This document shows positions 28 through 58,346 of a stretch of 64,000 nt of DNA, one piece after another (positions within the stretch are counted from its first letter, which is position 1; every line of letters starts with the position of its first letter). The stretch is from positions 62,001 through 126,000 of the IMG/VR virus record IMGVR_UViG_3300046559_001153. One strand, 5' to 3'. The position numbers and the translations under genes were made by a program. The notes beneath the pieces were generated by a model. It did no database searches. It was not told the DNA's origin and saw only the letters and a program-made list of their open reading frames with translations.

Positions 28-1086
28 GTGATTAACCCTAAATTGTACAGGGCTCTCGAGAAACGTTTTGGCGAGGTGCGTGTAGGCTCGCCAGGGCTCG
101 AGCTGATCGGCAAAACTGAGCGAATTACGACAGCGTCCGGCCGCGATCATCCTGTCTTGTCGGTGAGGTACTGGGGGGAGCATTACGCTGTCTGCTGCCC
201 CAAATGCGGAGATACCAAACATAGGCTCTATTTCAGCCAGCGATTTGGTGTCAGCGACAAGCACGGGCTCAATAAGAATCTCGTGTATTGCTTCAACGAG
301 AACTGCTATGCCGAGTGGGAAGACCGAGAACACCTGTACTCTTTGTTGTTCAACTTCAATATCGGTTCTCAGAAAATTACGGATTTGCGTAAAGGCAAGA
401 CTCTGACTGAGGTCGAGCTGAAGGTGGTGATCCCCGGCATCACTTACAAGTTGGAAGATCTCGATGAAGATCATGCTTCTCGACGATACATTGAAAGCCG
501 CGGTTTCGATCCAAACACCCTGTCAAAAATCTACGGGGTGTCTTATTGCGCGTTTGCCCAGGATTACCGCGTGCACAGGCGTATCTTGATCCCCGTCTAC
601 AATGACGGGAACCTTGTCGGCTGGCAGGCTCGCTATGTGGGTGAACTGGATTGGAAGGGTGAGAATAAGTCAGTCAAGAAGTACCATACCTGCCCGGGCA
701 TGAGGAAGTCTCTTTGCCTGTACAACCTGGACAGGGCTAAGCACTATCCGACCGGGGTAGTTGTTGAAGGTGTGACTGATGTGTGGTCCTTCGGTCCAAT
801 GGCCGTCTCTGGTTTCGGAGACAAGATCTCCCCAGGTCAAGTCGACTTGCTCGTTAAACATTTTCAGAACAAGTCGTTGTTGATTGTGTTGGATAGTGAG
901 CCGAGCGCGTTGGAAAAAGCGCACGAAGTCGCGGAAGAACTGCGTGGCCGAATCGTGAAGGGCGTAGCCGTGATAACGTTGCCCGACGGATCTGATCCGG
1001 CTGATCTGGATCGACGAGTTCTGTGGCAGATCGCTAAGAAACAGGCGGCAGAGCAGGGTGTGTTCTGCTCATTCAAACGGGCGTAA
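28..1086 (+). CDS. DNA primase (N-terminal Zn-binding domain + Toprim domain)
   Basis: CCPKC..H..C..NC Zn cluster; Toprim motifs VVVEGVTDVW, LDSE, DGSDPAD; GTG start overlapping TGA of an upstream frame. Confidence 0.88.
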   Translation: MINPKLYRALEKRFGEVRVGSPGLELIGKTERITTASGRDHPVLSVRYWGEHYAVCCPKCGDTKHRLYFSQRFGVSDKHGLNKNLVYCFNENCYAEWEDREHLYSLLFNFNIGSQKITDLRKGKTLTEVELKVVIPGITYKLEDLDEDHASRRYIESRGFDPNTLSKIYGVSYCAFAQDYRVHRRILIPVYNDGNLVGWQARYVGELDWKGENKSVKKYHTCPGMRKSLCLYNLDRAKHYPTGVVVEGVTDVWSFGPMAVSGFGDKISPGQVDLLVKHFQNKSLLIVLDSEPSALEKAHEVAEELRGRIVKGVAVITLPDGSDPADLDRRVLWQIAKKQAAEQGVFCSFKRA

Positions 1087-1101
1087 CTTTTCAAAAAGTT
1101 A
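1084..1101. promoter_or_regulatory. 18-bp palindromic motif copy 1 (TAACTTTTCAAAAAGTTA)
   Basis: Near-perfect inverted repeat overlapping primase stop, just upstream of polymerase SD; recurs 7 times. Confidence 0.7.
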
Positions 1102-1121
1102 ACAATTTAAGGAGTCGCGGT

Positions 1122-4100
1122 ATGGCTGATCGTGTGCTGATTTCTGATCTGTCCGCGTCGAAAGACAATACTAAAAAACAGCTGAGCAAGCAGGCAGTTG
1201 CCGGTTTGCGTGTCTATCCATTTACTGCCCCGGGGATGCCGAAACCGGGTCCGTCTTTTGTCGCCGCCGCCCGACAGTGGGTTGGAGAGCCCGACGAGCC
1301 TCCGCATGTCCTGTCGAAAGATCAGATCGTTAGGAGGAAAGAAGCGTACGATAAAGCTGTGAATGAACAACTCGCTCAGTTTTATGAGGACGCGTTATAC
1401 AATCCTTTCGATATGCCCGTCGGCTTCAGGCACAAGGATCCGCCATTCCGTGAAGCGCGTTTTGGGTCTAGCCATTTCGTCCCTGGCAGTTTATGGGATA
1501 CGTCTAATATGGGCGACAGGCATAACATGCCTCCGGGCGGATATGGCCCGCGTCGTGCTCGAATCATGGTTATCGGAAAGACGCCTAACCAGGATGAGGT
1601 CAGGCATAACCGTAATCTGGTTGGCGGACCCGGTAGCTATCTTCTCGAGATGCTTCGTCAGTACGGTATTGATGACATGGCCAGCTGGTATGTGACCAGC
1701 CTGGTGAAATTTATCCCGCCGAGGGATAAGACGGCTCTCGCAGCTGAGTGGGTTCAAGACTGCGCTCCGCTGTTGCAGATGGAATTAAGAATCGTTCGAC
1801 CGGAGATCATTCTTTGTCTCGGCGCTGATGCAGTGAAGGCTGTGTTTGGTAAGGGAGTCAAGTTGGCCGAGGTTGAAGGTCGTGATGTTCCCCTTACGTA
1901 CAATTACCATTTATCCGATAGTCATTATCCATTGCGCCACACGGCGAAAGTTTTCTCAGTCGTGCACCCTGCTTTCGTCATGCGTACTCCGGCCGAGGGG
2001 CCTAGATTGGCAGCTAGTTTATCTAGGTTTTCACGAATGTTAGCTGGTGAGGATCTGGGCCAGGAAGAGGTTGACATCGACCATCGCGTCATTCGAACGA
2101 TGGACGACTTGGTACTCACTTTGCAGGACGCAGATGACGAATGTACAGATGGCCTTATTGCTGTCGATGCCGAATGGAATGGGCGTCATCCGCAAAATCG
2201 TGACGCCTATGTGAGGACAATCCAGTTCTCCTGGGCTCATGGTAAGGCTGCCAATATCGTCGTGACAGACTCGACTGGCGGGTGGTGTTTTGATGAACCG
2301 AAAGAGGAGTTGATTGCCCGATTGCTCGACTTTTTCGAGGACAAGAGAGTCGTCGGTCACTACTTGGCAACTGACTTGGAAGTCCTCATTCACTGGGGAT
2401 TGGACCTGCGTCCTCAGTATGCCGTGCCGCAGGACAATCGCGGCGATCAGCTGGCGTGGGAACGCACGCGTAATGAAGGCGGGGCCAACACGGCTTACAT
2501 GGCTCACGCTATTGAAGAGACGGGCAAGTTTGGATTGGATGCTTTATCTTTGCGGTATACGTCTGCCCCGGCGTATTGGGCGGAATTGGATCAATGGAAG
2601 AAAGCCTACTGCGCCAAGAGAAAGATTAAGCTGAAGTCGCTCGAGGGATATGGTCCATGCCCTGATGCAACCCTGGTCCCTTACGGTAATTACGATGCCG
2701 ACGTTACCCTCCGTATTTACCACAAGCTGAATGATCTGTTGGACTGCGACTACCAGGGTAACTGCTGTCGTGAAGCGTATTGGCGATCGATGTCAGTCGA
2801 GCCGGCCGTGATCGAGATCAATCGAACAGGTCTCACGCTGGATATGACACGAGCCCGTGTTCTGGCTGAGCGTTTCATGAAAGCTCGCGATGAGCTAGAA
2901 GATCGAATCAGGGCGTGGGCTAAGTGGCCTAAATTGAATCTGAGATCACCGCTTGAGGTTAAGGAATTCCTGTTTGGCGCCAAGCTGAATGGCAAGAAAT
3001 CGCCGACTGGTGGTATGGTCCGTTTGCGTCCACCAGAGGCTAAGAGCCTCAGGCTGGCACCCATATTCGATACCAGCAAACGGCCGATATCCTGGGCTGA
3101 AATTGAAGAACGTCGCGAGACGGATATCTACAACCCGTCGACTAACAAGTCGAATCTGCAGCTGCTCTTCTACGAGAACGAAAAGTACTCCGAGCAGATC
3201 CGCTGGTTTCGCGACTTCCGTTTCGTTGATCAGGTGATGAAGTCTGTGCTGCAACCGAAAGACAGACGTTACGTGAACGAGGACTCGGTTCGAGATTTCA
3301 AGGGTGGTATTCCGTGGGCCATGTGTGACGACGGACGAGTTAGAACACACATCTGGACAACTAAAGAAACGGGTCGATGGTCGTCGAGTGATCCGCCGTT
3401 GCAGAATATCAGCAAAGTTCGTGACGACGATTACGCGAGAATTCTGGGTGCTGAGAACTACAAGAACAAGATTCGAAGTATGTTCAGAGCGACCAGGGCC
3501 AGCGATCCTGGTGCCTGGGTCAATGAGGACTGTCTGCTTATTGAAAGTGACTTTACTGGCGCCGAGTTATGTATGACGGCTTGGATGTCTGGCGACGCGG
3601 CGATGATTGAGCATGTGCGTCGTAACGCATTGCCGGAGAATGACCCAGACTACTACGACATCCACAGCAATGTGGCTGTGCTGGCTTTTCGTCTGAAATG
3701 TCTTCCGACAAAAGCTGGGTTGAAGTCGTTGCCAGGGCCGACCAAGGATGGCAAGAAGTACCTGCGAGATATCGCCAAACGAATCATGTTTGGAATGTTC
3801 TACGGACGAGGTGCTGCAGCCATTTCGCGTGAGGCTCGTGAGCAGGGGGTTGATGTTTCAGTCGACGAGGCTCAGGGCGTCATGGAGACCATTTTCGATC
3901 TCTATCCGAATTTGAGACCGTTTTACGCTGAGTGCAAAGCTAGAGCTTCAAATCCTGGCTGGATCTGTACAGCTTTCGGTAGTTTCCGACGGGTCATGCC
4001 GACGCGAGATCAGGAAGTACTGTCAGAGTTTGAACGACAGTTCATGAACGTCCCCATTCAGGGCGGGGTGGCCTATGCCATGTCGCAGGGGATTACCAAT

Positions 4101-8111: not shown

Positions 8112-9425
8112 ATGGCTAAGGAAGAGCAGGATGCTGAGAAGCCCAAACGCAAGAAAGCGAAGAAGGCTCAGAATGTAGGCTGGCACGATCCAAATTGTCG
8201 TACCACGCTTAGAGACAACACGATTCGATTCATGGTTGACGACTCGGCTCGAGAGTTTGGCGGGGCGTCGGCTGTGATGGTTGTCGGCGATGCGAACAAC
8301 ATGTTGATCGGATTGCCCATGCCGTGTATTGCCCTTGAATGGGCCATGGTCAACTCGATCTTCCCGCTCGGATTGCTGGTCCAGATCGTCGGTTTGCCCG
8401 GTACATGTAAGTCAGCGTTGATCTATGAGATTCTGCGTTGGTTTCACGAATTTGAGAATACCGGTATGGGTGTCCTCATCGAGAACGAAACCAAGATGTC
8501 CCAGGTTTTGATCAACTCGATTTTCAATTACTCGGCGAAGGGCTTGATCTTCGACGAGACATACAGCCTCGAGGAGTGGCAGGCTAAGATCCAGTATTAC
8601 ATTCGTCGCTTTCGCGAACGGATGGACGGGACAAAGTCTGAACCAGGCCCGGGACGGATCTACCCTGTAGGTCTCGCGTTGGACAGCTTGATGAGTAAGT
8701 CGGCTTTGGAGATTCAGGAGAAGGGTGAAAAGGAAGGCCACTTCGGTCGCAACTTCGCGATCGAAGCCGGGTCAATTAAGACGTTCATGCAGTCTGTTCC
8801 GCCCAAGCTGGCGGACATGCCTATGACGTTTCTTTACACCAATCACTTGAAACCGCAGACGAATCAGAAGACAGGCCACAAAGACGATCACGCGCCCGGC
8901 GGGTACGCGGTCGAATTCCAGGGCACGTTGATTCTGAAGACGACCGTTGTGAAGCGCAAGATTTCCACTGCTCATTTCGTCGGTCGCGGTATCGACATTA
9001 AGGTCATCAAGAATTCCATCGGGGAGACGGACCGATCATTTCAGACCCGTTTGCTGTGGTGGAATGAGTCGTATAACAACGAGGCCGGACAAGAGTGCCG
9101 CCGTCAACGGACCAGCTGGGATTGGGGATGGTCGACAGTCAAGTTCTTGAGTGAGCTGACTGGCGACGTAAAAGCCCGTGTCAGTGAGATCGTTGACCTG
9201 CACATTGGCCAGACTGGTGATGCGACTTGTAACGTCTGGTCGAAGGCTCTCGACATCAAACAGGGCCAGCCGTTCAGCTGGACTCGTGCTGGCGAGATGA
9301 TTCAGAATGACCCGGACATGCTGGCCAGGCTGAGGCTAGCGCTGGACATCAACGTTGGGACCATATTCAATCCCGGCGAAGATTATCGTGAGCAGCAGAA
9401 ACGACTGAAGAAAGGCTTGCCGTAA
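8112..9425 (+). CDS. recA: RecA/UvsX-like recombinase
   Basis: Walker A LVQIVGLPGTCKS, Walker B LALDSL, FLYTNHLK, APGGYAVEFQGTLIL (RecA TPGG-ALKFY equivalent). Confidence 0.88.
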   Translation: MAKEEQDAEKPKRKKAKKAQNVGWHDPNCRTTLRDNTIRFMVDDSAREFGGASAVMVVGDANNMLIGLPMPCIALEWAMVNSIFPLGLLVQIVGLPGTCKSALIYEILRWFHEFENTGMGVLIENETKMSQVLINSIFNYSAKGLIFDETYSLEEWQAKIQYYIRRFRERMDGTKSEPGPGRIYPVGLALDSLMSKSALEIQEKGEKEGHFGRNFAIEAGSIKTFMQSVPPKLADMPMTFLYTNHLKPQTNQKTGHKDDHAPGGYAVEFQGTLILKTTVVKRKISTAHFVGRGIDIKVIKNSIGETDRSFQTRLLWWNESYNNEAGQECRRQRTSWDWGWSTVKFLSELTGDVKARVSEIVDLHIGQTGDATCNVWSKALDIKQGQPFSWTRAGEMIQNDPDMLARLRLALDINVGTIFNPGEDYREQQKRLKKGLP

Positions 9426-12280: not shown

Positions 12281-12634
12281 ATGGCTGAAGGTACAGATCA
12301 CCGGTATGTGTTGACCAAGCTGGCCGCCCTGCTGGCCGAGCTGGAAACACAATTTGACGCCCATCTTTACTGGCAGCGTTTGTTGAATGATCCCACGGCG
12401 CCGGGCCTGTCGACGATCTATGTGCCCGAGACTGACAATTCAGAGGACAAGCTAGGCCGACTCGATCTGTCAGTGTTGTCACCAGACACATATCAGGCCT
12501 TGGTGACAGCCCAGCTGTCTGGCTCTTTCGTCAATTACAGCCGATCCTGGGACGAGGTCAGTAAATTGGCCAATCATGTTTTACAAGCGTTGACGGCTCC
12601 CGCGCAACCTCCGGCCCCAGTCCCACCATCATGA
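12281..12634 (+). CDS. Hypothetical protein
   Basis: Co-oriented ORF in tight array. Confidence 0.65.
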   Translation: MAEGTDHRYVLTKLAALLAELETQFDAHLYWQRLLNDPTAPGLSTIYVPETDNSEDKLGRLDLSVLSPDTYQALVTAQLSGSFVNYSRSWDEVSKLANHVLQALTAPAQPPAPVPPS

Positions 12635-13524
12635 TCGCCCGACTCCCACTCGCCCTGCAGAGAACAGCCAGGATCAGGCATGACGTGCTCAGCCTGTTGA
12701 CGATCGACTACAACAACTGTGTATTTGACGGCGAGAGTATCGACTCGCTGGTTAGCGATCTTCGTCAAATTATGCCGGCTATGACAAAGCCGACCGTCCT
12801 GGCCAGCTGCGTGAAATACCTGATCGGGCAACGGCCGAGCCCGGCAGCGCTCGAGTTGTTGGCCTGGCGGTTGGGTGGTAACTATTACCGAATAGCCCGA
12901 CGCCGGGTTGTTCTGCCGTGGCGTGGCCAGTCGATCGATGAGTGGGTACCTGCCTATGTCGATCAGGCCCGCCCCTACATTACAAAAAGGGGTAAGCACG
13001 GTTACATCTTCCGATTCAAGATTCTGGCTGGTTTTACAGCCGGGCTGCTGACTGAGCAGTTCTGGAGCGATTCATTCTGCCGGTTTATAAGTCGTGATTG
13101 CGGATTTACGCGTCGAGGATCCGGGGCAAGGTTTCAGCAGGGAAACCAATTTGTCCTGCTGCGATTCATGTTGCGAATTTCCGCGGTCAAATCCGTGACG
13201 CAGCCTGTCTTCGAGGGTGTGATGACTCCGGTCCCGTCGCCCTTGTTGAAATGGAATCGTGACATCGGGAAGAGTCGTGACCGGATGACCCCGTTTGAGG
13301 GGTGCCCGCCAGGCTACCAACGCCCTCTTGTGCTGCCATGTCATCTCTGCGATGTTGGTTTTGAGACGTGCAAAAACGGGACACACCGACGACAGTACGT
13401 CCGCGGTTACTGCACGATGTGCGACACGATCGACAGCTGGATTGATCCAGAATTCGATGACTCTGTGTGCATTCGATGCCTGTTTAAGGTGCGGATCAAT
13501 CCGGCCAAAGCTGTGTTGACGTAA
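12631..13524 (+). CDS. Hypothetical protein with C-terminal Cys cluster (putative Zn finger)
   Basis: CHLC..C..C...CTMC...CIRC near C-terminus; ATGA overlap. Confidence 0.65.
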   Translation: MIARLPLALQRTARIRHDVLSLLTIDYNNCVFDGESIDSLVSDLRQIMPAMTKPTVLASCVKYLIGQRPSPAALELLAWRLGGNYYRIARRRVVLPWRGQSIDEWVPAYVDQARPYITKRGKHGYIFRFKILAGFTAGLLTEQFWSDSFCRFISRDCGFTRRGSGARFQQGNQFVLLRFMLRISAVKSVTQPVFEGVMTPVPSPLLKWNRDIGKSRDRMTPFEGCPPGYQRPLVLPCHLCDVGFETCKNGTHRRQYVRGYCTMCDTIDSWIDPEFDDSVCIRCLFKVRINPAKAVLT

Positions 13525-16578: not shown

Positions 16579-17226
16579 ATGGCCCGCGGCAAGAAGATCG
16601 ATGAGTGGGAGTTTGAAATTGACAGCGTGATCGTCGTGATCCCCGTCTACATGCAAAAGGCCAAGTACGAGACACAGTTCAACGCATTGGCTCCCCAGTA
16701 CGAGTTGAACATGTGGGATAAAGACATCAACAAGCTTAAAGATGCGACGCGGGACGAACTGGCCGCCAAGCTGAGTGTTGTCTGGGAGCGATTCATTTAC
16801 GTCACATTCTGTGGGGTGAATGACCAGCCAACTGTTTACGACGACGATAACGCAGAGGAACTCGCCGAAAAACAACTCACAGGCGAATTCGAGGTTTTTA
16901 GTGGTCTGCAGTACGAGATCGTGGAGATAACCACCCGTGGTGACGGCGATAAGATGCATCGTCATCTACACGGGAATTATGGGAGCAGGGCGCTAAGCGG
17001 TCTTCCGCATACTGGTGTAGAGGCCCGCAATCTGCATTACGACTGGAAGCCGACGACGTCTGCCCTGATACCGTATACGCCTGAGAACATTGAAGCTCTG
17101 GAGACGATCCGCGGCCAGTTCATCGCGTTGAATAAGCTGCTCAAAGACCGGTTCATGCCGGACAAGATCGACGCCCTGCTGACAGAAGTTACGTCAAGTA
17201 AGTTGCGGCTCATGTACACCCCGTAA
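16579..17226 (+). CDS. Hypothetical protein
   Basis: AGGAGA SD, clean ORF. Confidence 0.7.
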   Translation: MARGKKIDEWEFEIDSVIVVIPVYMQKAKYETQFNALAPQYELNMWDKDINKLKDATRDELAAKLSVVWERFIYVTFCGVNDQPTVYDDDNAEELAEKQLTGEFEVFSGLQYEIVEITTRGDGDKMHRHLHGNYGSRALSGLPHTGVEARNLHYDWKPTTSALIPYTPENIEALETIRGQFIALNKLLKDRFMPDKIDALLTEVTSSKLRLMYTP

Positions 17227-17241
17227 CTTTTCAAAAAGGTA
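17224..17241. promoter_or_regulatory. 18-bp palindromic motif copy 3 (TAACTTTTCAAAAAGGTA)
   Basis: Overlaps stop codon; 17/18 identical to copy 1. Confidence 0.7.
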
Positions 17242-32550: not shown

Positions 32551-33123
32551 ATGAAGTACTTCGTTCGTTTTTTCTGGACCATTGTCGTAATGGGGATAGT
32601 CATCATTGCGGTCAACATCGTCTACAACACATTCTCCGATCAGACCGTTCACGCTCAGGTGATGAAACGGTTTGAACCGAAGATGGCCCCGAGTGACACC
32701 GTTGAAATGGACGAAGTACCGGCCGACAGAGTTCAGCAGGACGCTGAACAGGCCATGGCTATCAGGGTCGACCGACGTATTCGAATGCCCACGCATACAG
32801 ATATCGAGCTCTATTTGAGCTTCGGTGTTTTGCTGTTCGGGTTCTTCGTCATGCTCGGTCAATTTGCCATCATGATTCGTGAGCGTCGTTACTTCGACAA
32901 CATGTCGTTGAAGATGCTCACGATCACGATGGCCGTCACCAGTGCCCTGTTTTTAATAACGGCCGGGTTCAGCTCCGATCAGATCCAGCCGGCAATCGGC
33001 CTGATCAGTGGAACACTAGGTTTCGCGTTCGGTCTCCGCGGTGACACACCGGCTGACGCATCACAGAACTCGACACCCCGTCCGACACCCACGCCGCCGA
33101 TACCCCCGTCAATCAAACCATGA
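32551..33123 (+). CDS. Integral membrane protein
   Basis: About four hydrophobic segments; Pro-rich tail. Confidence 0.7.
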   Translation: MKYFVRFFWTIVVMGIVIIAVNIVYNTFSDQTVHAQVMKRFEPKMAPSDTVEMDEVPADRVQQDAEQAMAIRVDRRIRMPTHTDIELYLSFGVLLFGFFVMLGQFAIMIRERRYFDNMSLKMLTITMAVTSALFLITAGFSSDQIQPAIGLISGTLGFAFGLRGDTPADASQNSTPRPTPTPPIPPSIKP

Positions 33124-33135
33124 AAGGAATTTGTC

Positions 33136-33387
33136 ACGAATAAATCGAACTCATACAAACTCTGGGCTTCAGCCAATGACTCGGTCAAGTCAATTGGCGA
33201 GGCCCAGAGTTCTTTATTGTCCATGATTGGACTGATGAAGACGTCTGACGATAAGCTGATAGCCGGTTTGCGTCGCGCTATCAAGGCTCTAACCAAGACC
33301 CAACAGTTGGTTCGTCAAATCGAGCCTACGGTTAGTATTCGTCCGATTGATCCGAAGACGTACTTCAACGAGCACTCCGCTCTGTGA
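33136..33387 (+). CDS. Hypothetical protein (83 aa) with apparent ACG start
   Basis: GAAAGGA 7 nt upstream of in-frame ACG; stop overlaps GTG of next ORF. Confidence 0.5.
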   Translation, partial: TNKSNSYKLWASANDSVKSIGEAQSSLLSMIGLMKTSDDKLIAGLRRAIKALTKTQQLVRQIEPTVSIRPIDPKTYFNEHSAL

Positions 33388-33623
33388 ACGGGACTGTCGA
33401 ATGTGCGACCCCGTTCCTTATCCTGATTTGTGCTAGATGTTCTCGCATTCGTCGTGTGCCAGTTTCGCTGGCCGATGATCTGCCTACCGTGTGCTGTAAC
33501 GAGGTGCCACATACGGGCACACAGTGCGGCGGTTGGCTCCGCCCGTTGACCGGCGTGGAGCGAATGAATGAGGCTGACGCCTGGCAAGATGGCCAGCTGC
33601 GTTGGCGACGTTCCGAGCCCTAG
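33384..33623 (+). CDS. Small Cys-rich hypothetical protein
   Basis: CARC...CC...CGG; GTGA overlap. Confidence 0.5.
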   Translation: MNGTVECATPFLILICARCSRIRRVPVSLADDLPTVCCNEVPHTGTQCGGWLRPLTGVERMNEADAWQDGQLRWRRSEP

Positions 33624-33624
33624 A

Positions 33625-33642
33625 TAACTTAGTAAAAAGTTA
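33625..33642. promoter_or_regulatory. 18-bp palindromic motif copy 4 (TAACTTAGTAAAAAGTTA)
   Basis: First element of AT-rich 190-bp intergenic region. Confidence 0.65.
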
Positions 33643-33813
33643 CGGGTTTTTGAACATCTGTACACGCGATTATTGCTCATCAATTTTGTAAAAGTTTGAG
33701 CTACCCCCCTAAAACGAGTCAGTTCCGAGCTAGTGCTTTATCCAACCCAATGGGTGCTAAGTTAGGTACAAGGGGTACCTTAGTTAACCGAATCCTCACC
33801 AACTGGAACTCAA

Positions 33814-34089
33814 ATGCCCCCAAAGAAACCCCACCGACGCCCAAATCTGACGCCTGAGGCCCCTGGCGGGCCCGCTGACGCTGTCGCGGTCCGAAACGCG
33901 TTATGGCGCTTTTGCACGACGATCGAGGCCACAGGTGGCGTTGTACGCGATTTGAGGGGAAATTATTGGCCAGTGGGCGATCCGGGCTGGATGGATCTGG
34001 CATTTGACTACATGACGGCCTGTTCTGCACTGGGCCGCAAGCCTAAGTGTAAGCGTGGTCGTCATCCTAACCCATTGTCTTATTTATAG
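33814..34089 (+). CDS. Hypothetical protein
   Basis: TIEATGGV...PVGDPGWMDLA..Y..AC.ALG pattern. Confidence 0.6.
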   Translation: MPPKKPHRRPNLTPEAPGGPADAVAVRNALWRFCTTIEATGGVVRDLRGNYWPVGDPGWMDLAFDYMTACSALGRKPKCKRGRHPNPLSYL

Positions 34090-34158
34090 TTGCGATGAAT
34101 GGTCGCAGATTGCGACCAAGTTGCGACAAATTGGTTGTCAACTGATAAGGAGAGATTG

Positions 34159-34488
34159 ATGGGTGATTCGTCGAGGATGGACCGCAATTACCGGTTCATG
34201 GAAGCATTCAATGAAGCGGCAGTCGCCAGCTGCTCGATAAAGCCGGGAGATACGCTGATCGTTAAAAGCACGGGCCTCGGCGAGCTGGATGGAATGACTT
34301 CCGGTGTGGGAATGTACGCCGTACTTCAATCTGCTAGCGGACAGTCTTTTGGGCTGATTCTGCAGGAGTACGGGGAGCTGTTCGAATCCGACGATAGCCT
34401 GTCTGACGCGGTCGAGCGGATATCGTCGACACTAAGCTTGGACGAGGCGAAGGTTCGCGAGATGCTCGTGGAGGCCGACCTTGACTAG
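34159..34488 (+). CDS. Hypothetical protein
   Basis: AGGAGA SD. Confidence 0.65.
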   Translation: MGDSSRMDRNYRFMEAFNEAAVASCSIKPGDTLIVKSTGLGELDGMTSGVGMYAVLQSASGQSFGLILQEYGELFESDDSLSDAVERISSTLSLDEAKVREMLVEADLD

Positions 34489-34765
34489 CACGCAGCGGAT
34501 CATGCTGGTCTGTGAAGGCTACATCTGGTCGAAGTCTCGCGGTTGGCTGGCTAAAGACGAGATTCTGATACCGGAGCTGTGGCCTCGAACGACCGGTGGC
34601 CGGGATGCGGCTGTACTGCGGATGGATTTTGCTCTTCCGCGTTTACCGCCAGAGCTCGACAAACGCAAGAATCTGAAGATTCGCGTTGTGACAGTGACGC
34701 TGAATTTCATGGAAGATGTCGAGCTGGAAAGCATCAAGGTGCCCAAAGACCGTGTCAAACTGTAA
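34481..34765 (+). CDS. Hypothetical protein
   Basis: TTG start after GGAGG, overlaps previous stop. Confidence 0.6.
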   Translation: MTSTQRIMLVCEGYIWSKSRGWLAKDEILIPELWPRTTGGRDAAVLRMDFALPRLPPELDKRKNLKIRVVTVTLNFMEDVELESIKVPKDRVKL

Positions 34766-34769
34766 CCGA

Positions 34770-34787
34770 TAACTTTTTACAAAGTTA
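34770..34787. promoter_or_regulatory. 18-bp palindromic motif copy 5 (TAACTTTTTACAAAGTTA)
   Basis: Intergenic, abuts AGGAG SD. Confidence 0.65.
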
Positions 34788-34798
34788 AGGAGTCAAGC

Positions 34799-35371
34799 AT
34801 GAGCAGTGAAGCATCTCGTCCGTCGTTTGGTGACATTCGTGCCAGGCGAAGGGTTGCCGTGTTAACCGCGGCTGAGCACAGGTGGCAAGCAGCCAAAAAC
34901 GCGGCTTATGACGCCGAGCGTGGTCTCAACGAATTGATCGATTCGGCTGTGCCATTTGTTTGCAAGGCAGCCACCAAGCAACGGGTCAATATCGAGTGGA
35001 AAGGCTATAAGCAGAACGCCCAGTTTTCTACGAGCGTCATCATGGGCGTGAAGGCTAAGCAGATTCTATACGCGTTGAACAACAACAAGAAGTCGATTCA
35101 ATGGCAGCCGATCAGGGATATCACCCTGTTCCTGTCTATTTCGGCCGCGTTCAAGTTCTGCAAGCCCCTGCGATGGTCGCACCTTAAAGCGGCGCACAAG
35201 GCCTGGGCAAAAGCCCTGGCTAAAGCTCAGCATCTCGAAAAGGTGCATCAGCTGCTCGTCAGAGACCCCAGCCGCATTTACGACCCGCATCTGGAGCACT
35301 CGGGCGATCTGTCGTTGATCGAGGCTGACGCCGAGCGGGTCGTCGATTACTTCATTCGAGAGCTGAAGTAA
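34799..35371 (+). CDS. Hypothetical protein
   Basis: AGGAG SD, clean ORF. Confidence 0.7.
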   Translation: MSSEASRPSFGDIRARRRVAVLTAAEHRWQAAKNAAYDAERGLNELIDSAVPFVCKAATKQRVNIEWKGYKQNAQFSTSVIMGVKAKQILYALNNNKKSIQWQPIRDITLFLSISAAFKFCKPLRWSHLKAAHKAWAKALAKAQHLEKVHQLLVRDPSRIYDPHLEHSGDLSLIEADAERVVDYFIRELK

Positions 35372-35380
35372 GAGGAACCA

Positions 35381-35605
35381 GTGTCCAGGCCATGGTTGGT
35401 TACGACAAACACCAGATCGAGGAGGGTGGAGATGAATGGATCCGCACCGAGTCAGTCATGCCCGTTGATTCCAACTACGAAGAACGAGGAGCTCGAATAC
35501 CGTGTCTGGCAAGTCGAAGCAGCTATCGACTTGCACCGGCAGAAAGGCCTGAGCGATGAGCGGCTCTACGCCATTCTTGGTGACGGGCTCGATCTCAAGG
35601 AGTAG
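35381..35605 (+). CDS. Hypothetical protein
   Basis: GAGGA SD, GTG start. Confidence 0.55.
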   Translation: MSRPWLVTTNTRSRRVEMNGSAPSQSCPLIPTTKNEELEYRVWQVEAAIDLHRQKGLSDERLYAILGDGLDLKE

Positions 35606-35607
35606 CC

Positions 35608-35811
35608 ATGCGTAGACAGCAACTGGTTAAGCGGCCGACAGGATTGGCCATTCCACGCGGCGGCCACAATTACGACCTGCTTGCCTGGTTGCTGTCTCCG
35701 TTGGTTGTCGTGAGGAATGGAAAGCGAACTGTGCTGCGGACGACCAGAGAACAGATTGCCAGGTACTGGTACCTAATCGAGGAAGATTCTGCTCAGTTTT
35801 ATACGAAATGA
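35608..35811 (+). CDS. Hypothetical protein
   Basis: AAGGAG SD. Confidence 0.6.
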   Translation: MRRQQLVKRPTGLAIPRGGHNYDLLAWLLSPLVVVRNGKRTVLRTTREQIARYWYLIEEDSAQFYTK

Positions 35812-35838
35812 TCGGCCAGGTAGATCACCGTCGGCCGG

Positions 35839-36735
35839 GTGAATGAGACCTATAAAATTCCCGAGGTCTGGGCAGTCAGTTGCAGCGTAGACGCCGAGTT
35901 AACCGGCGAAAGCAAAGCAGCTGGCTGCCTTCGGCTTTTTATGGAGAGCCAAATGTACTTTGAAACACGGATACAGACGCACAAATTACGCCCTCTAGCC
36001 AGGGGATTCGACCGGTCTTACTTTCAGAAAATAGACCGGAAAGTCGGCGACCGAGAGAAGTCGGAACAGCGACTGAGGATTACCAAATTCTTTGTCGACG
36101 CGTTCGAGGAATATCGCATCAGGCAGCTCAAGGTGTTCTCCTACCCGGCGATTTATTGGCGCTGGGAGCGGCAGCTTCAACGGGCCATTACCTGCCCGGA
36201 GAAGCTGTTCATCGGGGTTGAGCGATTCAGGGACGTGCAGCTGAAGTCGCGCAAGCACATACTTGGAGGAAAGCCGCACGCAAGACGCTGGCGAACAGCC
36301 TGCGATGACGTCATCGGGTACGAGACAAGATCAGCCCGCTCGATCCATTTTCAGGCCGAACGACTCTGGATGATCGATCCGTTTGAGATGGGCGACGCGG
36401 ACGAATTTCATCGACAATTTCTGGACTGGACTGGCGCCTGGATCGATCCGTGCTGCCCACTGACTGGACATTTTGCCGCCGCTTTGCCTTATATGCTGAA
36501 TCGGTTTTCGGCGACTGCTCCCGTGTGCCCGCTTGCAGTCAGTTTCGTCATCGGCCGAGACAACTGGACGACAAAAAGGGATGAATTGGCTTTGAATCCG
36601 CGACTTGATGCTCTGCTGCGGATATTCGCTCGAAACAAGAAACGCCGGTTCGAACTGATTGACGCGTTCACTTACCGTCGATACGGCCGATCAAGCTTGA
36701 TGGGGACAGTGCTCGGCCTGGTCCATTTGCCCTAG
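35839..36735 (+). CDS. Hypothetical protein, possible divergent class I SAM-dependent methyltransferase fold
   Basis: LKVFSYPAIYWRWE (motif I-like), FIGVERFRD (motif II-like), WMID, LAVSFVIGRD. Confidence 0.35.
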   Translation: MNETYKIPEVWAVSCSVDAELTGESKAAGCLRLFMESQMYFETRIQTHKLRPLARGFDRSYFQKIDRKVGDREKSEQRLRITKFFVDAFEEYRIRQLKVFSYPAIYWRWERQLQRAITCPEKLFIGVERFRDVQLKSRKHILGGKPHARRWRTACDDVIGYETRSARSIHFQAERLWMIDPFEMGDADEFHRQFLDWTGAWIDPCCPLTGHFAAALPYMLNRFSATAPVCPLAVSFVIGRDNWTTKRDELALNPRLDALLRIFARNKKRRFELIDAFTYRRYGRSSLMGTVLGLVHLP

Positions 36736-47177: not shown

Positions 47178-47302
47178 GTCTGCATCGTCCGTAAGCCGCG
47201 TGAGCGGAACCGAACTGTCGCGTGTCGTTACTCATCCACGCGGACAGAAACCATAAAGGCGGTGCCGGCCCCGCCGCGGGATCTGCGGCCTGACCGGTCT
47301 TT

Positions 47303-47320
47303 TACCTTTTCAAAAAGTTA
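47303..47320. promoter_or_regulatory. 18-bp palindromic motif copy 6 (TACCTTTTCAAAAAGTTA)
   Basis: Intergenic, abuts GGAG SD; 17/18 identical to copy 1. Confidence 0.7.
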
Positions 47321-54777: not shown

Positions 54778-54787
54778 GGAGATTCAA

Positions 54788-55388: not shown

Positions 55389-55612
55389 TGGCCGACGTCG
55401 TCAGTCTGAAGTCTGTGGGCTGTGCTTACCGAAACGGACGTCGGATGCCCGGTTGGGGCGTCATTTCGCTCGATGACGGCAGGAAGCTGTATTGCCGCGA
55501 AGCTGAGAACAGTTTTGACGCCATGTGTGCCCGGGCCGAATTGCTCGGGCACACAGTTTCTAGAATGCGAGCCCGTCTCGATCACTGGGTGGAGACGGGC
55601 CAGTTTATTTGA
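55385..55612 (+). CDS. Hypothetical protein
   Basis: GTGA coupling. Confidence 0.6.
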   Translation: MMADVVSLKSVGCAYRNGRRMPGWGVISLDDGRKLYCREAENSFDAMCARAELLGHTVSRMRARLDHWVETGQFI

Positions 55613-56380: not shown

Positions 56381-56393
56381 AAAGGAGCCGACA

Positions 56394-56840
56394 ATGCCCG
56401 AGACCAAACTGACCTGGCAGGAACTGAACACGTGGAAGCTGCACGAGCTGCTTGACTTGGCTCTGACCGATCTGAAGAAGCACGAGAATACGTCAGGCTG
56501 TGTCGTGAATATGTCCGTTTTCTTGTGGACCGGTGAAAGGCCTGGGGATAAATGCCAGGCTTGTCTGGCTGGAACTGTGTTACGACATTCGTTGGGACTG
56601 CTAAACCTGAGAGATTTGGTCAGCGGCGAGTCGCTTGATGTGCGGCAAGAGGCTCGCCGGTGGGTTTACGCAATCGATTACCTGCGGGCGGGCAGCGTGA
56701 GCCTGGCGCAAGAGGAGATGGATCGAGCAGAGCCGGCCGAGCCGATGGACCGAGTGGTTGTGGACTACCACGACGACCGCGACATGTGGCTCCACGACAT
56801 GACTCTGTTGCTGAGCGATCTTCGAGCGGCGAACCTTTAA
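56394..56840 (+). CDS. Hypothetical protein, paralog family B member 3
   Basis: KLHELLDLALTDLKKH...CQACLAGTV...IDYLRAGSV...LL.DLRAANL. Confidence 0.75.
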   Translation: MPETKLTWQELNTWKLHELLDLALTDLKKHENTSGCVVNMSVFLWTGERPGDKCQACLAGTVLRHSLGLLNLRDLVSGESLDVRQEARRWVYAIDYLRAGSVSLAQEEMDRAEPAEPMDRVVVDYHDDRDMWLHDMTLLLSDLRAANL

Positions 56841-56857
56841 TACCGAAGGAGAGGGAT

Positions 56858-57508
56858 ATGACCAGTAGCGATCGAGCGCGTGTGGGTTGTCTGCTGATAG
56901 CGTTGTTTGCGTTCATGGCGATCTACAGCGGTATCGCGTGGCACTGGTGGCATGACCCGGTCTCCCCATTCAAACCCGGAGACCGGGTCGTTCATCGGCA
57001 GAATCCCAAGGTCCGTGGCATATTCGTGGCCCTGGTCGTCGAGAACGGGATCCAGATGGCTTGTGTTTCGACAGACCGCGAAGCCATCTGGGAGACGGTC
57101 AATCCTTTCACCATTCCGTACGTTCAGAAGATGCCCGTGGTCCTATTGCGAAAGGAAGAACTGAGTGATAAACAACCAGATGTACGAGAGGGCCCGCCAG
57201 ACGCTCCAGGTCGCGACGGGGAACAACCAGAGCAGAATCACCCAAGACGCCTTCAACGACGGGTGGAAGTCCCTCCTGGAGTTCATGACGCGACCGCCGA
57301 CAATGCTGGCCAGAAAGAGAGACACGTACGAGGTCTTTTACTGGACTGGCGACAATGTCGTCGAGCTACACGCGTTCATGCGGGGCACGCTGCTGCCAAA
57401 GCATTTTCCACCCATGCAGTGGATCACTCGTCGCAGCAGCACCGACGAGATCAATTACTGGTCATCAGACGAATTCAACCATGTCTTCGAACTGATCGCC
57501 GAGCTTAA
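56858..57508 (+). CDS. Membrane-anchored hypothetical protein (C-terminal about 115 codons overlap next gene)
   Basis: AAGGAGAGG SD; TM helix then FKPGDRVVH; no stop at the junction with 57165. Confidence 0.5.
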   Translation: MTSSDRARVGCLLIALFAFMAIYSGIAWHWWHDPVSPFKPGDRVVHRQNPKVRGIFVALVVENGIQMACVSTDREAIWETVNPFTIPYVQKMPVVLLRKEELSDKQPDVREGPPDAPGRDGEQPEQNHPRRLQRRVEVPPGVHDATADNAGQKERHVRGLLLDWRQCRRATRVHAGHAAAKAFSTHAVDHSSQQHRRDQLLVIRRIQPCLRTDRRA

Positions 57509-57572
57509 ACCACTGGAAGAAGACGACGCTTCGGCATCGAAACCGCGGTCTGTAGGGGAGGGAACACATTGA
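57165..57572 (+). CDS. Hypothetical protein
   Basis: GAAAGGA SD then GTG. Confidence 0.65.
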   Translation: MINNQMYERARQTLQVATGNNQSRITQDAFNDGWKSLLEFMTRPPTMLARKRDTYEVFYWTGDNVVELHAFMRGTLLPKHFPPMQWITRRSSTDEINYWSSDEFNHVFELIAELKPLEEDDASASKPRSVGEGTH

Positions 57573-57922
57573 TGAAACGAATTGACCCAAGTCTGATTCC
57601 CGATCTGTACGTCAAACACCAGCTGACTCCGGAGCAGGGAACGACACTAAAAAAGGACGAGGGCAAAGCCTGTCTGTTGGGGCTGCTGTACGTCGACGAG
57701 TGTTCGCCGGTGATACTTAATGACCCGGGTTTTGTTATTGCAATCGCCCAGCTGGCGAGGCGCGGGTATGACCCAGAGTACCTGCGGGGTTTGATGACTG
57801 GTTTTGATGGTCGCCGTCTGAAAATTGACGAGGACGAGTCTGAATACGTGATTGACGGATTCGAAGATGGCCGAACTGCCGTTAAGCTCCTAATTGCGAA
57901 AGGGATGGAATGGTTGAGATGA
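57569..57922 (+). CDS. Hypothetical protein, paralog family C member 2
   Basis: RIDPSLIPDL...CLLGLL...YLRGLMTGFDG. Confidence 0.7.
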   Translation: MMKRIDPSLIPDLYVKHQLTPEQGTTLKKDEGKACLLGLLYVDECSPVILNDPGFVIAIAQLARRGYDPEYLRGLMTGFDGRRLKIDEDESEYVIDGFEDGRTAVKLLIAKGMEWLR

Positions 57923-58320
57923 CCGAGAGAGACGAGGCCATCCGTGGGATTGCTGTCAGCGTGTTCAAGCAGCACGACCTGTACACGCTGCACAGCCAGG
58001 TGATTGTGCATGGCAAGTCTATTCGCTTGGAGCTGTTTCCTCACGCGGTACGACATCAGCTGAGTGCCTTGTCGTTGGAGCTCGCGCCCGAGCTGAGGAT
58101 GTACCTCTTGGGGATTTACCTGCCGGAAGAGTGGTGGGGGATGGGCTTCGGTCAACAGTTGTACGACCTGGCTTGTGAGCTGGCGTCCGAGCTGGTGCTG
58201 GAAGACGTAGTGCAGTATCCGGTAGGGAAGACGGCTCGCGGAGAGCTGCGGCGAGATTACCTGCTTCGCCGCGGGTGGATGCCGTGTGAGGATGATCAAG
58301 TCCGCCGGTTTGTAATCTGA
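57910..58320 (+). CDS. GNAT-family acetyltransferase-like protein
   Basis: LLGIYLPEEWWGMGFGQQLY resembles acetyl-CoA-binding motif A; ...YLLRRGW. Confidence 0.55.
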   Translation: MVEMTERDEAIRGIAVSVFKQHDLYTLHSQVIVHGKSIRLELFPHAVRHQLSALSLELAPELRMYLLGIYLPEEWWGMGFGQQLYDLACELASELVLEDVVQYPVGKTARGELRRDYLLRRGWMPCEDDQVRRFVI

Positions 58321-58328
58321 CCGGCGGT

Positions 58329-58346
58329 TACCTTTTTAACAAGTTA
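58329..58346. promoter_or_regulatory. 18-bp palindromic motif copy 7 (TACCTTTTTAACAAGTTA)
   Basis: Intergenic, follows GC hairpin 58302-58327, precedes GAAAGG SD. Confidence 0.6.

What the first reader, a model, noticed from the sequence alone, without database searches (positions are those of the whole stretch)
1084..58346. Window-wide 18-bp palindrome at gene junctions: candidate phage operator/regulon
Seen directly: TAACTTTTCAAAAAGTTA (1084), TAACTATCTAAAAAGTTA (13522), TAACTTTTCAAAAAGGTA (17224), TAACTTAGTAAAAAGTTA (33625), TAACTTTTTACAAAGTTA (34770), TACCTTTTCAAAAAGTTA (47303), TACCTTTTTAACAAGTTA (58329). All are 18 bp, AT-rich in a GC-rich genome, none lies inside a gene body, three use the upstream TAA stop as their first bases and most sit 0-25 nt before an SD. 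Inference: binding site of a dimeric regulator (or phage-specific promoter element) coupling the DNA polymerase gene with scattered accessory genes. The loop is too short for a good RNA hairpin, favouring DNA recognition. No obvious cognate repressor was recognised in the window.
Basis: partly seen in the sequence, partly recalled or inferred. Interest (0 to 1): 0.75.

Follow-up and report, generated by a model that had tools for sequence, protein, structure and literature searches.

The report
Repeated junction palindrome in jumbo phage
An 18-base mirror-symmetric DNA word sits just ahead of genes at 23 evenly spaced places in a 224-kb soil phage that carries its own RNA polymerase. It is most likely the docking site of an unidentified phage protein pair that controls blocks of genes.

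Summary
All seven sites are present, against 0.02 expected by chance. The window lies in a complete 224-kb soil jumbo phage, which holds 23 such sites. Twenty-two are at gene junctions, and 18 end 2-22 nt before a start codon. Half-sites never occur alone. All 29 arm deviations affect one arm only and none is compensated, and the RNA hairpins are weak. The motif is therefore read as double-stranded DNA by a symmetric reader. It is not a hairpin or a terminator tail.

Sites are spaced far more evenly than random gene starts (about 9.4 kb, CV 0.46). Relatives from the same uncultivated clade carry different 16-18-bp palindromes in the same architecture, also evenly spaced. This points to a phage-encoded, co-evolving reader.

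The phage encodes a bacterial-type RNA polymerase (beta-beta' fusion, beta' C-terminal piece) and one sigma factor. The sigma and DNA polymerase genes sit behind a site here and in one distant relative. No conventional promoter elements flank the sites, and no repressor-like protein was found in about 230 ORFs.

Best reading: a phage-specific promoter/operator element marking the heads of transcription units. Whether it activates, represses or is the promoter itself is unresolved, because no transcript data exist. It is a new variant of known phage multi-site operator or promoter systems.

The parts
1084..1101 (.). Palindrome site 1 (TAACTTTTCAAAAAGTTA). Bases 1-3 are the stop codon of ORF 28-1086. 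It ends 20 nt before the ATG of the DNA polymerase gene.
   Evidence: PWM 35.7 bits
1122..4397 (+). Gene behind site 1: family A DNA polymerase with an N-terminal UDG-like domain and a 3'-5' exonuclease domain.
   Evidence: PF00476, PF03167, PF01612; large metagenomic clade, 40-48% identity
13522..13539 (.). Palindrome site 2 (TAACTATCTAAAAAGTTA). It overlaps the stop of ORF 12631-13524. AGGAG abuts the site and the ATG lies 12 nt downstream.
   Evidence: 27.6 bits
13552..14001 (+). Gene behind site 2 (149 aa, no Pfam family; only viral hypothetical look-alikes).
17224..17241 (.). Palindrome site 3 (TAACTTTTCAAAAAGGTA). It overlaps the stop of ORF 16579-17226. A GTG start lies 21 nt downstream.
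   Evidence: 32.7 bits
17263..17961 (+). Gene behind site 3 (232 aa, no Pfam family).
33625..33642 (.). Palindrome site 4 (TAACTTAGTAAAAAGTTA), inside a spacer of about 700 nt. It is the only window site without an adjacent start codon.
   Evidence: Rfam finds nothing credible there
34770..34787 (.). Palindrome site 5 (TAACTTTTTACAAAGTTA), 4 nt after the stop of ORF 34481-34765. AGGAG abuts the site and the ATG lies 11 nt downstream.
   Evidence: 33.5 bits
34799..35371 (+). Gene behind site 5 (190 aa, no Pfam family).
47243..47302 (+). Structured GC-rich stretch directly 5' of site 6 (60-nt MFE -22.2 kcal/mol, against a background of -14.0 +/- 4.7). Possible terminator of the upstream unit.
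47303..47320 (.). Palindrome site 6 (TACCTTTTCAAAAAGTTA). TGGAG follows and the ATG lies 11 nt downstream.
   Evidence: 33.3 bits
47332..47679 (+). Gene behind site 6 (115 aa). The N-terminus reads like a twin-arginine signal peptide. No Pfam family.
58300..58329 (+). GC-rich hairpin (10 pairs) whose T-rich tail is the first arm of site 7. A terminator-like element abutting the palindrome.
58329..58346 (.). Palindrome site 7 (TACCTTTTTAACAAGTTA). The ATG lies 20 nt downstream.
   Evidence: 28.8 bits
58367..58774 (+). Gene behind site 7 (135 aa, no Pfam family, no informative look-alike).

Best explanation
The 18-bp palindrome (consensus TAACTTTTYRAAAAGTTA) is a double-stranded DNA site read as two 9-bp half-sites by a phage-encoded symmetric reader, probably a homodimer. 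It marks the heads of about 23 co-directional transcription units, each about 9 kb long. At each head the bound protein controls initiation or re-initiation by the phage's own sigma-containing RNA polymerase. It therefore acts as a combined promoter/operator, sitting between the end of one unit (a stop codon or terminator hairpin) and the ribosome-binding site of the next. Shown: the existence, symmetry, placement and even spacing of the sites; the lineage-specific sequence; and the phage-encoded polymerase and sigma. Inferred: that a dimer binds, that the process controlled is transcription, and the direction of the effect.
For: (1) Non-random and junction-bound. There are 7 sites in the window against 0.02 expected and 23 genome-wide with a clean score gap. 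Twenty-two of 23 lie outside called genes, and 18 of 23 end 2-22 nt before a start codon. This includes all 7 sites that have a long upstream spacer.
(2) Symmetric dsDNA reading. Half-site 8-mers never occur alone. There are 29 one-arm deviations and 0 two-arm or compensated ones here; in relative G001 the counts are 29 and 2, with 0 compensated. RNA hairpins are 0 to -5.3 kcal/mol.
(3) It is the only strongly enriched non-coding motif apart from the Shine-Dalgarno sequence. No -35-like or UP-like element flanks it. Sigma70-consensus promoters are not enriched in non-coding DNA: 3 of 25 fall there.
(4) Even spacing. CV is 0.46, with P about 1.5e-4 against random gene starts. Against uniform positions, P is 5e-5 here, 0.011 for G005, 0.004 for G007 and 0.0065 for G001.
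(5) A phage-encoded reader is implied by lineage-specific sequences in the same architecture. L072 has ACTTATCGATAAGT. G001 has 42 exact and about 61 near copies of TGAGTAAYGCRTTACTCA, mostly abutting AAAGGAG-ATG. The L081-L087 group has TAAAATCYRGATTTTA at 5-11 per record. Controls give 0-1.
(6) The phage has its own transcription machinery. It encodes a beta-beta' fusion, a beta' C-terminal piece and a true sigma70-family protein. In the distant isolate Arash the homologous beta, beta' and sigma are abundant in virions (PMC10585845).
(7) The sigma gene and the DNA polymerase gene are each directly preceded by the lineage's own palindrome, both here and in G001, at 35-39% protein identity.
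(8) Strong hairpins abut about 7 sites on the 5' side, leaving only the palindrome as room for a start signal.
Against: No transcript 5' ends are available. Transcription control is therefore inferred from position only. No candidate dimeric DNA-binding protein was found. Pfam on about 230 of about 260 ORFs gives only sigma, the polymerase pieces and one small zinc-ribbon hit. Six-frame searches find no HTH_3, ParB or integrase. A perfectly symmetric element cannot by itself set the direction of transcription. Five sites have no start codon nearby. About 15 good terminators elsewhere are not followed by the motif, so other unrecognised start signals must exist. In the L081-L087 group and in G002 the sigma gene is not preceded by the palindrome. 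The isolate Arash, with homologous polymerase and sigma, has no palindrome. It carries instead a directional GGTATAAG motif.
Confidence: 0.5

Rival explanations
1. The palindrome is itself the complete promoter of the phage sigma-RNA polymerase holoenzyme, with no extra factor. One half acts as a -10-like element and transcription starts inside or just after the motif.
For: It is the only conserved non-coding motif in a phage with its own polymerase and sigma. The sigma gene sits behind a site in two lineages, as for auto-regulated sigma factors. In Arash, 30 directional copies of GGTATAAG lie 16-35 nt before start codons. Their core ATAAGT resembles the gene-proximal half here (AAAAGT) and in L072 (ATAAGT). 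Five sites place the ATG 2-5 nt after the motif, which would give very short leaders.
Against: Sigma70-family factors read asymmetric elements. Here both arms are equally conserved (16 against 13 deviations) and half-sites never stand alone. A symmetric promoter would fire in both directions, yet almost all genes are on one strand. In several sites the Shine-Dalgarno sequence abuts the motif, which conflicts with a start 6-7 nt after the gene-proximal half.
Confidence: 0.15
2. The sites are roadblock operators, as with stoperators. A phage repressor binds at unit boundaries and halts elongating polymerase, silencing or timing downstream blocks. Initiation occurs elsewhere.
For: Many copies sit in short intergenic spaces, often overlapping stop codons, spread over the whole genome. 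This matches the description of L5-type stoperators (PMC9283540). Three sigma70-like promoter cassettes lie 1.6-2.2 kb upstream of a site.
Against: Stoperators are asymmetric 13-mers read by a monomer, are orientation-dependent, and belong to temperate phages. Here the site is symmetric. No integrase, Cro/CI-type HTH or ParB is found. Sites that directly follow strong hairpins would have little transcription left to block.
Confidence: 0.15
3. The sites serve a non-transcriptional DNA function: loop anchoring or condensation, replication or recombination entry, or site-specific nicking. They are intergenic only because an 18-bp palindrome is hard to fit into coding sequence.
For: Under-dispersed spacing of about 7-10 kb recurs in three lineages. 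In relatives G002 (L104) and L115, repeated palindromes lie inside long open frames. Five sites here have no adjacent start.
Against: When the spacer is long, the site lies 5-22 nt from the downstream start in 7 of 7 cases. In G001 most sites abut AAAGGAG. No ParB-type protein was found. It is not shown that the L104 and L115 repeats belong to the same system.
Confidence: 0.1
4. The motif acts in RNA or as extruded single strands: a hairpin that terminates, stabilises or is processed, or merely the T-tract tail of upstream terminators.
For: It is palindromic. The T-run of the first arm directly follows a GC hairpin at window 58300-58329 and at a few other sites.
Against: Predicted hairpins are 0 to -5.3 kcal/mol, and two of the seven do not fold. 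There are 0 compensatory changes among 29 deviations here and 31 in G001. Sixteen of 23 sites have no upstream hairpin. The genome's clear terminators use a different tail and lack the motif. There is no Rfam match.
Confidence: 0.04
5. The sites form a host transcription-factor regulon co-opted by the phage, for example a CodY-like or other global regulator box.
For: From memory, the core TTTTC-GAAAA loosely resembles the Firmicute CodY box AATTTTCWGAAAATT. This was not tested.
Against: Relatives carry unrelated palindromes in the same architecture. The sites are far more uniform than host regulons. A scan of 185,579 species genomes gave only single hits, mostly in genera known for AT-rich genomes. 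Two 220-kb contigs that looked promising hold one site each. The spacing also differs from the CodY box by one base.
Confidence: 0.03
6. The sites are a selfish repeated extragenic palindrome (REP-like) spread by a phage- or host-encoded transposase, with no role for the phage.
For: The palindromes are lineage-specific and site positions turn over between relatives: there is no site before the polymerase gene in L070-L072.
Against: There is no hairpin covariation. Registration with start codons is tight. Spacing is even, not clustered. No transposase family turned up in the Pfam scans of about 230 ORFs.
Confidence: 0.03

Closest known systems
Operator/stoperator sites of Cluster A mycobacteriophages (L5, TipsytheTRex)
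   Same: More than 20 copies of one short motif are distributed over the whole phage genome. They lie in promoters and in short intergenic spaces and are read by one phage protein that controls initiation and elongation (PMC9283540).
   Different: Stoperators are asymmetric 13-mers bound by a monomer. They are orientation-dependent, belong to temperate phages and act on the host polymerase. Here the site is an 18-bp palindrome. No integrase or repressor was found, and the phage has its own polymerase and sigma.
Start-associated sequences and extended SAS (17-bp inverted repeats) of Cluster K mycobacteriophages
   Same: Repeated elements are tied to the translation starts of a subset of genes. 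The inverted-repeat consensus differs between sub-lineages, is conserved at orthologous genes, and has no known function (PMC3203893).
   Different: [quoted passage not shown] They are restricted to one genome half. Here there is a single contiguous 18-bp palindrome, no accompanying asymmetric box, and coverage is genome-wide and evenly spaced.
Conserved inverted repeats (CIR) bound by the phiC31 repressor, and KorA/KorB operators of plasmid RK2 (from my own knowledge, not checked here)
   Same: These are palindromic operators of 13-17 bp, repeated 7-18 times in intergenic DNA and read by a dimeric global regulator of the element itself.
   Different: Those regulators are known HTH or ParB-family proteins, and the operators sit next to recognisable promoters. 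Here no such protein and no flanking promoter elements are seen.
Phage-specific promoters of phages with their own RNA polymerase (T7-type, N4 hairpin promoters, phiKZ/AR9)
   Same: A single lineage-specific conserved motif stands in front of gene blocks in a phage that encodes its own polymerase. It sometimes follows terminators directly.
   Different: Those promoters are asymmetric (T7, phiKZ, AR9) or depend on a hairpin with paired arms (N4; from my own knowledge). Here the arms are symmetric but show no pairing covariation.
Directional GGTATAAG motif of Salmonella phage Arash, seen here and apparently not described
   Same: Arash shares the beta-beta' polymerase (30% identity) and sigma (24%). 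It has about 30 copies of one motif 16-35 nt before start codons.
   Different: The Arash motif is asymmetric and strand-specific (30 against 1). Arash has no repeated palindrome.

Membership tests
Dimeric-repressor operator set (lambda/phiC31-CIR type) | Two-fold symmetric site with independently read half-sites | tested here: met
   Consensus is a perfect 18-bp palindrome. There are 29 one-arm deviations and 0 two-arm ones, and half-sites never occur alone.
Dimeric-repressor operator set (lambda/phiC31-CIR type) | Cognate DNA-binding regulator encoded by the element | tested here: inconclusive
   Pfam on about 230 ORFs and six-frame HTH_3 and ParB searches find none. The only hits are sigma and a zinc-ribbon hit, probably the 102-aa ORF at genome 48209-48517. 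Many ORFs have no family at all.
Dimeric-repressor operator set (lambda/phiC31-CIR type) | Operators overlap recognisable promoters | tested here: not met
   There is no -35-like element at 16-18 bp (mean 2.17 matches against 2.42 background) and no conserved flank position.
Stoperators (Cluster A mycobacteriophages) | Asymmetric 13-bp site whose orientation follows transcription | tested here: not met
   The site is symmetric, with both arms equally conserved. Definition from PMC9283540.
Stoperators (Cluster A mycobacteriophages) | Many sites in short intergenic spaces across the genome | tested here: met
   23 sites, 22 at junctions, with a mean spacing of 9.4 kb.
Stoperators (Cluster A mycobacteriophages) | Temperate phage with an immunity repressor | tested here: not met
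   No Phage_integrase or HTH_3 match in six frames.
Phage-polymerase promoter (T7/phiKZ type) | Phage encodes its own RNA polymerase | tested here: met
   Rpb2_6 plus Rpb1_2 in one 1472-aa ORF, Rpb1_5 in a second ORF, and a sigma70-family protein.
Phage-polymerase promoter (T7/phiKZ type) | Directional (asymmetric) motif with a transcription start at a fixed distance | tested here: not met
   The motif is symmetric. No strand bias is possible, and the flanks are not conserved.
Phage-polymerase promoter (T7/phiKZ type) | Primary transcript 5' ends map to the motif | not testable with these tools
   No RNA run was listed for the phage.
Intrinsic terminator | Stable GC-rich hairpin followed by a U-tract | tested here: not met
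   The motif's own hairpin is 0 to -5.3 kcal/mol. Only about 7 of 23 sites have a strong hairpin upstream. Clear terminators elsewhere lack the motif.
REP/RAYT-type selfish palindromes or N4-type hairpin promoters | Arms kept complementary (structure-level selection) | tested here: not met
   0 compensatory changes among about 60 deviations in two genomes.
Host transcription-factor regulon | Same motif enriched in a candidate host genome | tested here: inconclusive

The most novel reading that the evidence does not exclude
The palindromes are a new kind of transcription-unit punctuation. They occur in a large uncultivated clade of jumbo phages that carry a bacterial-type polymerase with its own sigma factor. 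In this reading a still unknown phage dimer, co-evolving with its site, both stops the incoming polymerase and licenses re-initiation at evenly spaced boundaries. The system would be insulated from the host, possibly on chemically modified DNA.
Probability: 0.2. Interest if true: 0.8.

Novelty: new variant of a known kind. Interest (0 to 1): 0.6.

Why it matters
The window belongs to a widespread but uncultivated clade of roughly 200-kb phages. At least 143 relatives are in IMG/VR, and there are about 200 polymerase homologues in metagenomes from soil, water and other sources. Nothing is known about how this clade controls transcription.

A single 18-bp word that tiles the genome at even intervals, and that changes sequence from lineage to lineage, gives a concrete handle on that control. 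The word can be used as bait to find the protein that reads it, to predict transcription units in these genomes, and to test whether the phage sigma-polymerase works alone. It would also provide an orthogonal set of operator-protein pairs.

If the element turns out to be an ordinary repressor operator, the finding is a useful but unsurprising annotation.

Tried and rejected
- RNA evidence: no RNA run was listed for a 10-kb stretch. The 22 holders are DNA runs from soil, rhizosphere and root metagenomes.
- Population variation: contigs from four DNA runs laid on window 33000-36000 were identical, so there is no information on selection.
- Exact-motif scans of IMG/VR and of species genomes gave only single, chance-like hits. 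Two contigs of about 222 kb that looked like relatives hold one site each.
- Close-relative search with the polymerase protein alone found nothing. It needed an alignment.
- The weak Sigma70_r2 hit at genome 150112-150252 lies in an NAD epimerase and is false.
- Integrase, HTH_3 and ParB were sought in six frames and are absent. T7-type RNA_pol is absent too, but the control did not ring, so that result is uninformative.
- Atlas look-alikes of three ORFs behind sites gave no DNA-binding lead.
- The palindromes of L104/G002 and L115 were first counted as parallels. I set them aside because they lie inside long open frames.
- The sigma gene is preceded by the palindrome only here and in G001, not in G005, G007 or G002.
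- A tRNA-like 3' fragment before genome site 155683 was confirmed by neither ARAGORN nor Rfam.
- Arash was tested as an experimental proxy and has no palindrome.
- The argument 'a terminator upstream means the motif must be the promoter' was weakened. About 15 other terminators have no motif after them.

Full report
**1. Check of the observation**

The seven 18-mers are at the stated coordinates. With up to three mismatches to the best copy the window has exactly these seven places. One hundred dinucleotide-preserving shuffles give a mean of 0.02 and never more than 1.

The window is bases 62001-126000 of a 224,270-bp IMG/VR virus record. The record is rated complete, has 55.5% GC, and is found in many soil, rhizosphere and root metagenomes. 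Its 127-bp terminal repeat is probably an assembly overlap of a circular or permuted genome.

Almost all of the roughly 260 genes lie on the + strand. Genome-wide, the degenerate pattern TAMCT-N8-AGKTA occurs 17 times, against 3 for the reversed control. A symmetric weight matrix separates 23 sites (15.7-35.9 bits) from everything else (4.1 bits or less).

**2. Anatomy**

The consensus is TAACTTTTYRAAAAGTTA, a perfect 9+9 palindrome around a pyrimidine-purine step.

- Twenty-two of 23 sites lie outside called genes. The exception, at genome 189953, is near the 3' end of an intein-containing ORF.
- Several sites use their first TAA as the stop codon of the upstream gene.
- Eighteen sites end 2-22 nt before a + strand start codon, usually with AGGAG-like sequence in between. 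Five of these have only 2-5 nt and no Shine-Dalgarno sequence.
- Where the upstream spacer is long, the site still lies 5-22 nt from the downstream start (7 of 7 cases).
- Five sites have no start nearby.
- Forty bases on either side carry no conserved position, no -35-like hexamer at 16-18 bp and no AT-rich upstream element.
- The palindrome is the only strongly enriched non-coding word besides the ribosome-binding site.

**3. DNA or RNA, symmetric or not**

The half-site 8-mers TAACTTTT and AAAAGTTA occur 11 times each and never outside a full site. Among the 23 sites, 29 arm positions deviate from consensus. Every deviation is in one arm only, and none is compensated.

The seven window sites fold as RNA at only 0 to -5.3 kcal/mol, and two do not fold at all. 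Rfam finds nothing in the window.

Selection therefore acts on two independently read half-sites in duplex DNA, not on a hairpin. It also removes the terminator-tail explanation for most sites. Only about 7 of 23 have a strong hairpin directly upstream. The genome's clear intrinsic terminators mostly stand elsewhere and lack the motif.

**4. Spacing**

The sites are spread over the whole genome with a mean spacing of 9.4 kb and a coefficient of variation of 0.46. The largest gap is 17.2 kb. Random sets of 23 gene starts reach so low a CV in 0.015% of trials, and uniform positions do so in 0.005%.

The genes behind the sites are of all kinds:
- the sigma factor;
- the DNA polymerase;
- the RNA polymerase beta' C-terminal piece, fused to ligase domains;
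- an AAA ATPase;
- a GP88-family protein and a DUF6197 protein;
- many ORFs without any family.

This is the pattern of unit boundaries rather than of a functional regulon.

**5. The phage's transcription machinery**

One 1472-aa ORF joins beta (Rpb2 domains 2, 3 and 6) to the catalytic part of beta' (Rpb1 domain 2). A second ORF carries Rpb1 domain 5. The 244-aa protein behind genome site 3521 is a genuine sigma70-family factor, with region 3 by Pfam and an alignment to SigA regions 2.4-3.1.

The nearest isolates by these proteins are Salmonella phage Arash and three Vibrio phages, at 24-30% identity. In Arash the homologous beta, beta' and sigma are among the most abundant virion proteins (PMC10585845). 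The polymerase may therefore be injected with the DNA.

Sigma70-consensus promoters are not enriched in the non-coding DNA of this genome. There are three exceptions: nearly identical cassettes of hairpin, TTTTAGCTATCAGC, then -35/-10-like hexamers, at genome 144.7, 175.1 and 194.8 kb.

**6. Relatives**

The polymerase gene defines a large metagenomic clade, with about 200 proteins at E of 1e-20 or better. The 120 listed share 38-50% identity with the query, some on contigs of 200-240 kb. IMG/VR holds 143 relatives, of which 80 loci were fetched.

None of them has this phage's motif, but several have their own:
- The closest relative, L072 (48% identity), carries ACTTATCGATAAGT. This differs by one base per half-site. 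Two of its three copies are at junctions, one directly after a terminator hairpin and 18 nt before an ATG.
- A distant relative, L144/G001 (35% identity), has 42 exact and about 61 near copies of TGAGTAAYGCRTTACTCA in 138 kb (control 0). Most abut AAAGGAG and a start codon, and none of its deviations is compensated.
- The L081-L087 group has TAAAATCYRGATTTTA at 5-11 copies per record, with controls of 0-1.

Spacing is under-dispersed in these genomes too. In G001 the left arm deviates more often than the right (26 against 7). This is explained by its overlap with upstream stop codons (TGA, TAA) and last codons, so it need not mean a directional function.

G001 is syntenic with this phage. Its sigma gene (39% identity) and its polymerase gene are each directly preceded by G001's own palindrome. 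This does not hold for sigma in three other relatives or for the polymerase gene in L070-L072.

Palindromes seen in L104/G002 and L115 lie inside long open frames and were not counted. Arash has no repeated palindrome. It has about 30 strand-specific copies of GGTATAAG, followed by a GTGTAAA-like run, 16-35 nt before start codons.

**7. Who reads it**

Lineage-specific sequence in a conserved architecture argues for a phage-encoded, co-evolving reader rather than a host factor. A scan of one genome per prokaryotic species found only single, chance-like hits.

I scanned about 230 ORFs against Pfam, including every small ORF of the window. I found no helix-turn-helix, ribbon-helix-helix or ParB-type protein. 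The only relevant hits were sigma, the polymerase pieces and one TFIIB-type zinc-ribbon hit. That hit probably belongs to a 102-aa ORF with two CxxC pairs at genome 48209-48517. Six-frame searches for HTH_3, ParB and tyrosine integrase were negative while their controls rang.

It is either a fold that Pfam does not recognise or the polymerase holoenzyme itself.

**8. Mechanism**

The data fit best with a symmetric protein bound to duplex DNA at the head of each of about 23 transcription units, controlling initiation or re-initiation by the phage polymerase. The arguments for a link to initiation are:
- the tight registration with start codons;
- the lack of any other conserved start signal;
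- the hairpins that abut some sites;
- the position before the sigma gene in two lineages.

The arguments against a pure promoter are:
- the strict symmetry, which cannot set direction;
- the absence of lone half-sites;
- the Shine-Dalgarno sequences that abut the motif.

A stoperator-like roadblock is the main rival. It shares the genome-wide intergenic distribution. It differs in symmetry, in the apparent absence of lysogeny functions, and in the polymerase concerned. A non-transcriptional role, such as loop anchoring or nicking, is kept alive by the regular spacing and the five sites without a nearby start. Hairpin, terminator-tail, host-regulon and selfish-repeat readings are each contradicted by a direct test.

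**9. Comparison with known systems and novelty**

The element works like the multi-copy operators of phages and plasmids: L5 stoperators, the phiC31 inverted repeats and the RK2 KorA/KorB sites (the last two from my own knowledge). In placement it is like the start-associated inverted repeats of Cluster K mycobacteriophages, whose function is also unknown. It fails at least one defining feature of each: asymmetry, bipartite form, a recognisable regulator or flanking promoters.

It is best filed as a new variant of a known kind. It is a lineage-specific, evenly spaced junction palindrome in an uncultivated jumbo-phage clade that has its own sigma-dependent polymerase.

**10. Limits**

- Gene calls are my own codon-usage model, and some 'non-coding' stretches are surely unannotated genes.
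- Only the 20-kb polymerase neighbourhoods of most relatives were examined.
- No transcript data exist.
- The population sample showed no variation.

Noticed in passing
L064:677-800, L065:12034-12140, L066:12750-12870 (genome 144.7, 175.1 and 194.8 kb); partial copy at L060:1786-1830: Three nearly identical cassettes: a GC hairpin, then TTTTAGCTATCAGC, then -35/-10-like hexamers at a fixed offset (for example TTGCGT-17-GATAAT and TTGACA-17-AATCAT). These may be host-type early promoters coupled to terminators. Each lies 1.6-2.2 kb upstream of a palindrome site.
   Followed up: partly
L065:2675-7093 and L065:13732-17883: The RNA polymerase is encoded as a beta-beta' (N-terminal) fusion of 1472 aa, plus a beta' C-terminal piece. 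The latter is in one open frame with LigD 3'-phosphoesterase and ATP-dependent DNA ligase domains, an unusual fusion.
   Followed up: partly
L063:5136-6356; L065:8309-8686; one unlocated ORF among the 36 window ORFs of alignment A2: An adenylosuccinate-synthetase homologue (PurA/PurZ-like), a protein with the N-terminal domain of dATP/dGTP diphosphohydrolase (MazZ-like) and a MazG-domain ORF. Together they hint at 2-aminoadenine or another modified base in the DNA. If so, that would affect how the A/T-rich palindrome is read.
   Followed up: partly
L066:5518-8133: An 871-aa ORF contains Hint and LAGLIDADG domains (an intein). The only intragenic palindrome site (genome 189953) lies near its 3' end.
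   Followed up: no
window:47332-47679: The ORF behind site 6 begins with a twin-arginine-like signal (SRRTFFG followed by an alanine-rich stretch), which suggests an exported phage protein.
   Followed up: no
window:8045-8074: A strong intrinsic terminator (13 pairs, 10 of them G-C, with a T-tail) stands before the RecA-like gene at 8112-9425. No palindrome follows it, so other start signals must exist.
   Followed up: partly
L161-L170 (Salmonella phage Arash, OQ632216.1): About 30 strand-specific copies of GGTATAAG followed by a GTGTAAA-like run lie 16-35 nt before start codons of the minus-strand genes. This is a likely promoter of the virion polymerase-sigma or an extended -10 host promoter. 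The Arash paper does not use the words 'promoter' or 'motif'.
   Followed up: partly
L153-L159 (G001), e.g. 11962, 33763, 49362, 99667, 84958: A subset of G001 palindromes is followed not by a ribosome-binding site but by a conserved run, ACTTTAGGCCTAGACTATGACG-like or AATTTCGGCGTAGATTA-like. These are either paralogous gene starts or a second element.
   Followed up: no
L104 / G002 (15 sites) and L115: Other clade members carry repeated palindromes inside long open frames: CAWTGATATCAWTG, and GTGGAGACGTCTCCAC with one-base variants in L115. In G002 three neighbouring intervals are each about 9.9-10.0 kb. It is unclear whether this is the same system.
   Followed up: partly
L061:10209-10517 (genome 48209-48517): A 102-aa ORF with two CxxC pairs is the probable source of a TFIIB-type zinc-ribbon Pfam hit (E 3.7e-5) in a batch scan. 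Apart from sigma, it is the only possible transcription-factor-like small protein found.
   Followed up: partly
genome ends (G000:C1:1-127 and 224144-224270): The 'direct terminal repeat' of the record is exactly 127 bp, the size of a common assembler k-mer overlap. It probably reflects a circular or permuted assembly rather than true physical ends.
   Followed up: no
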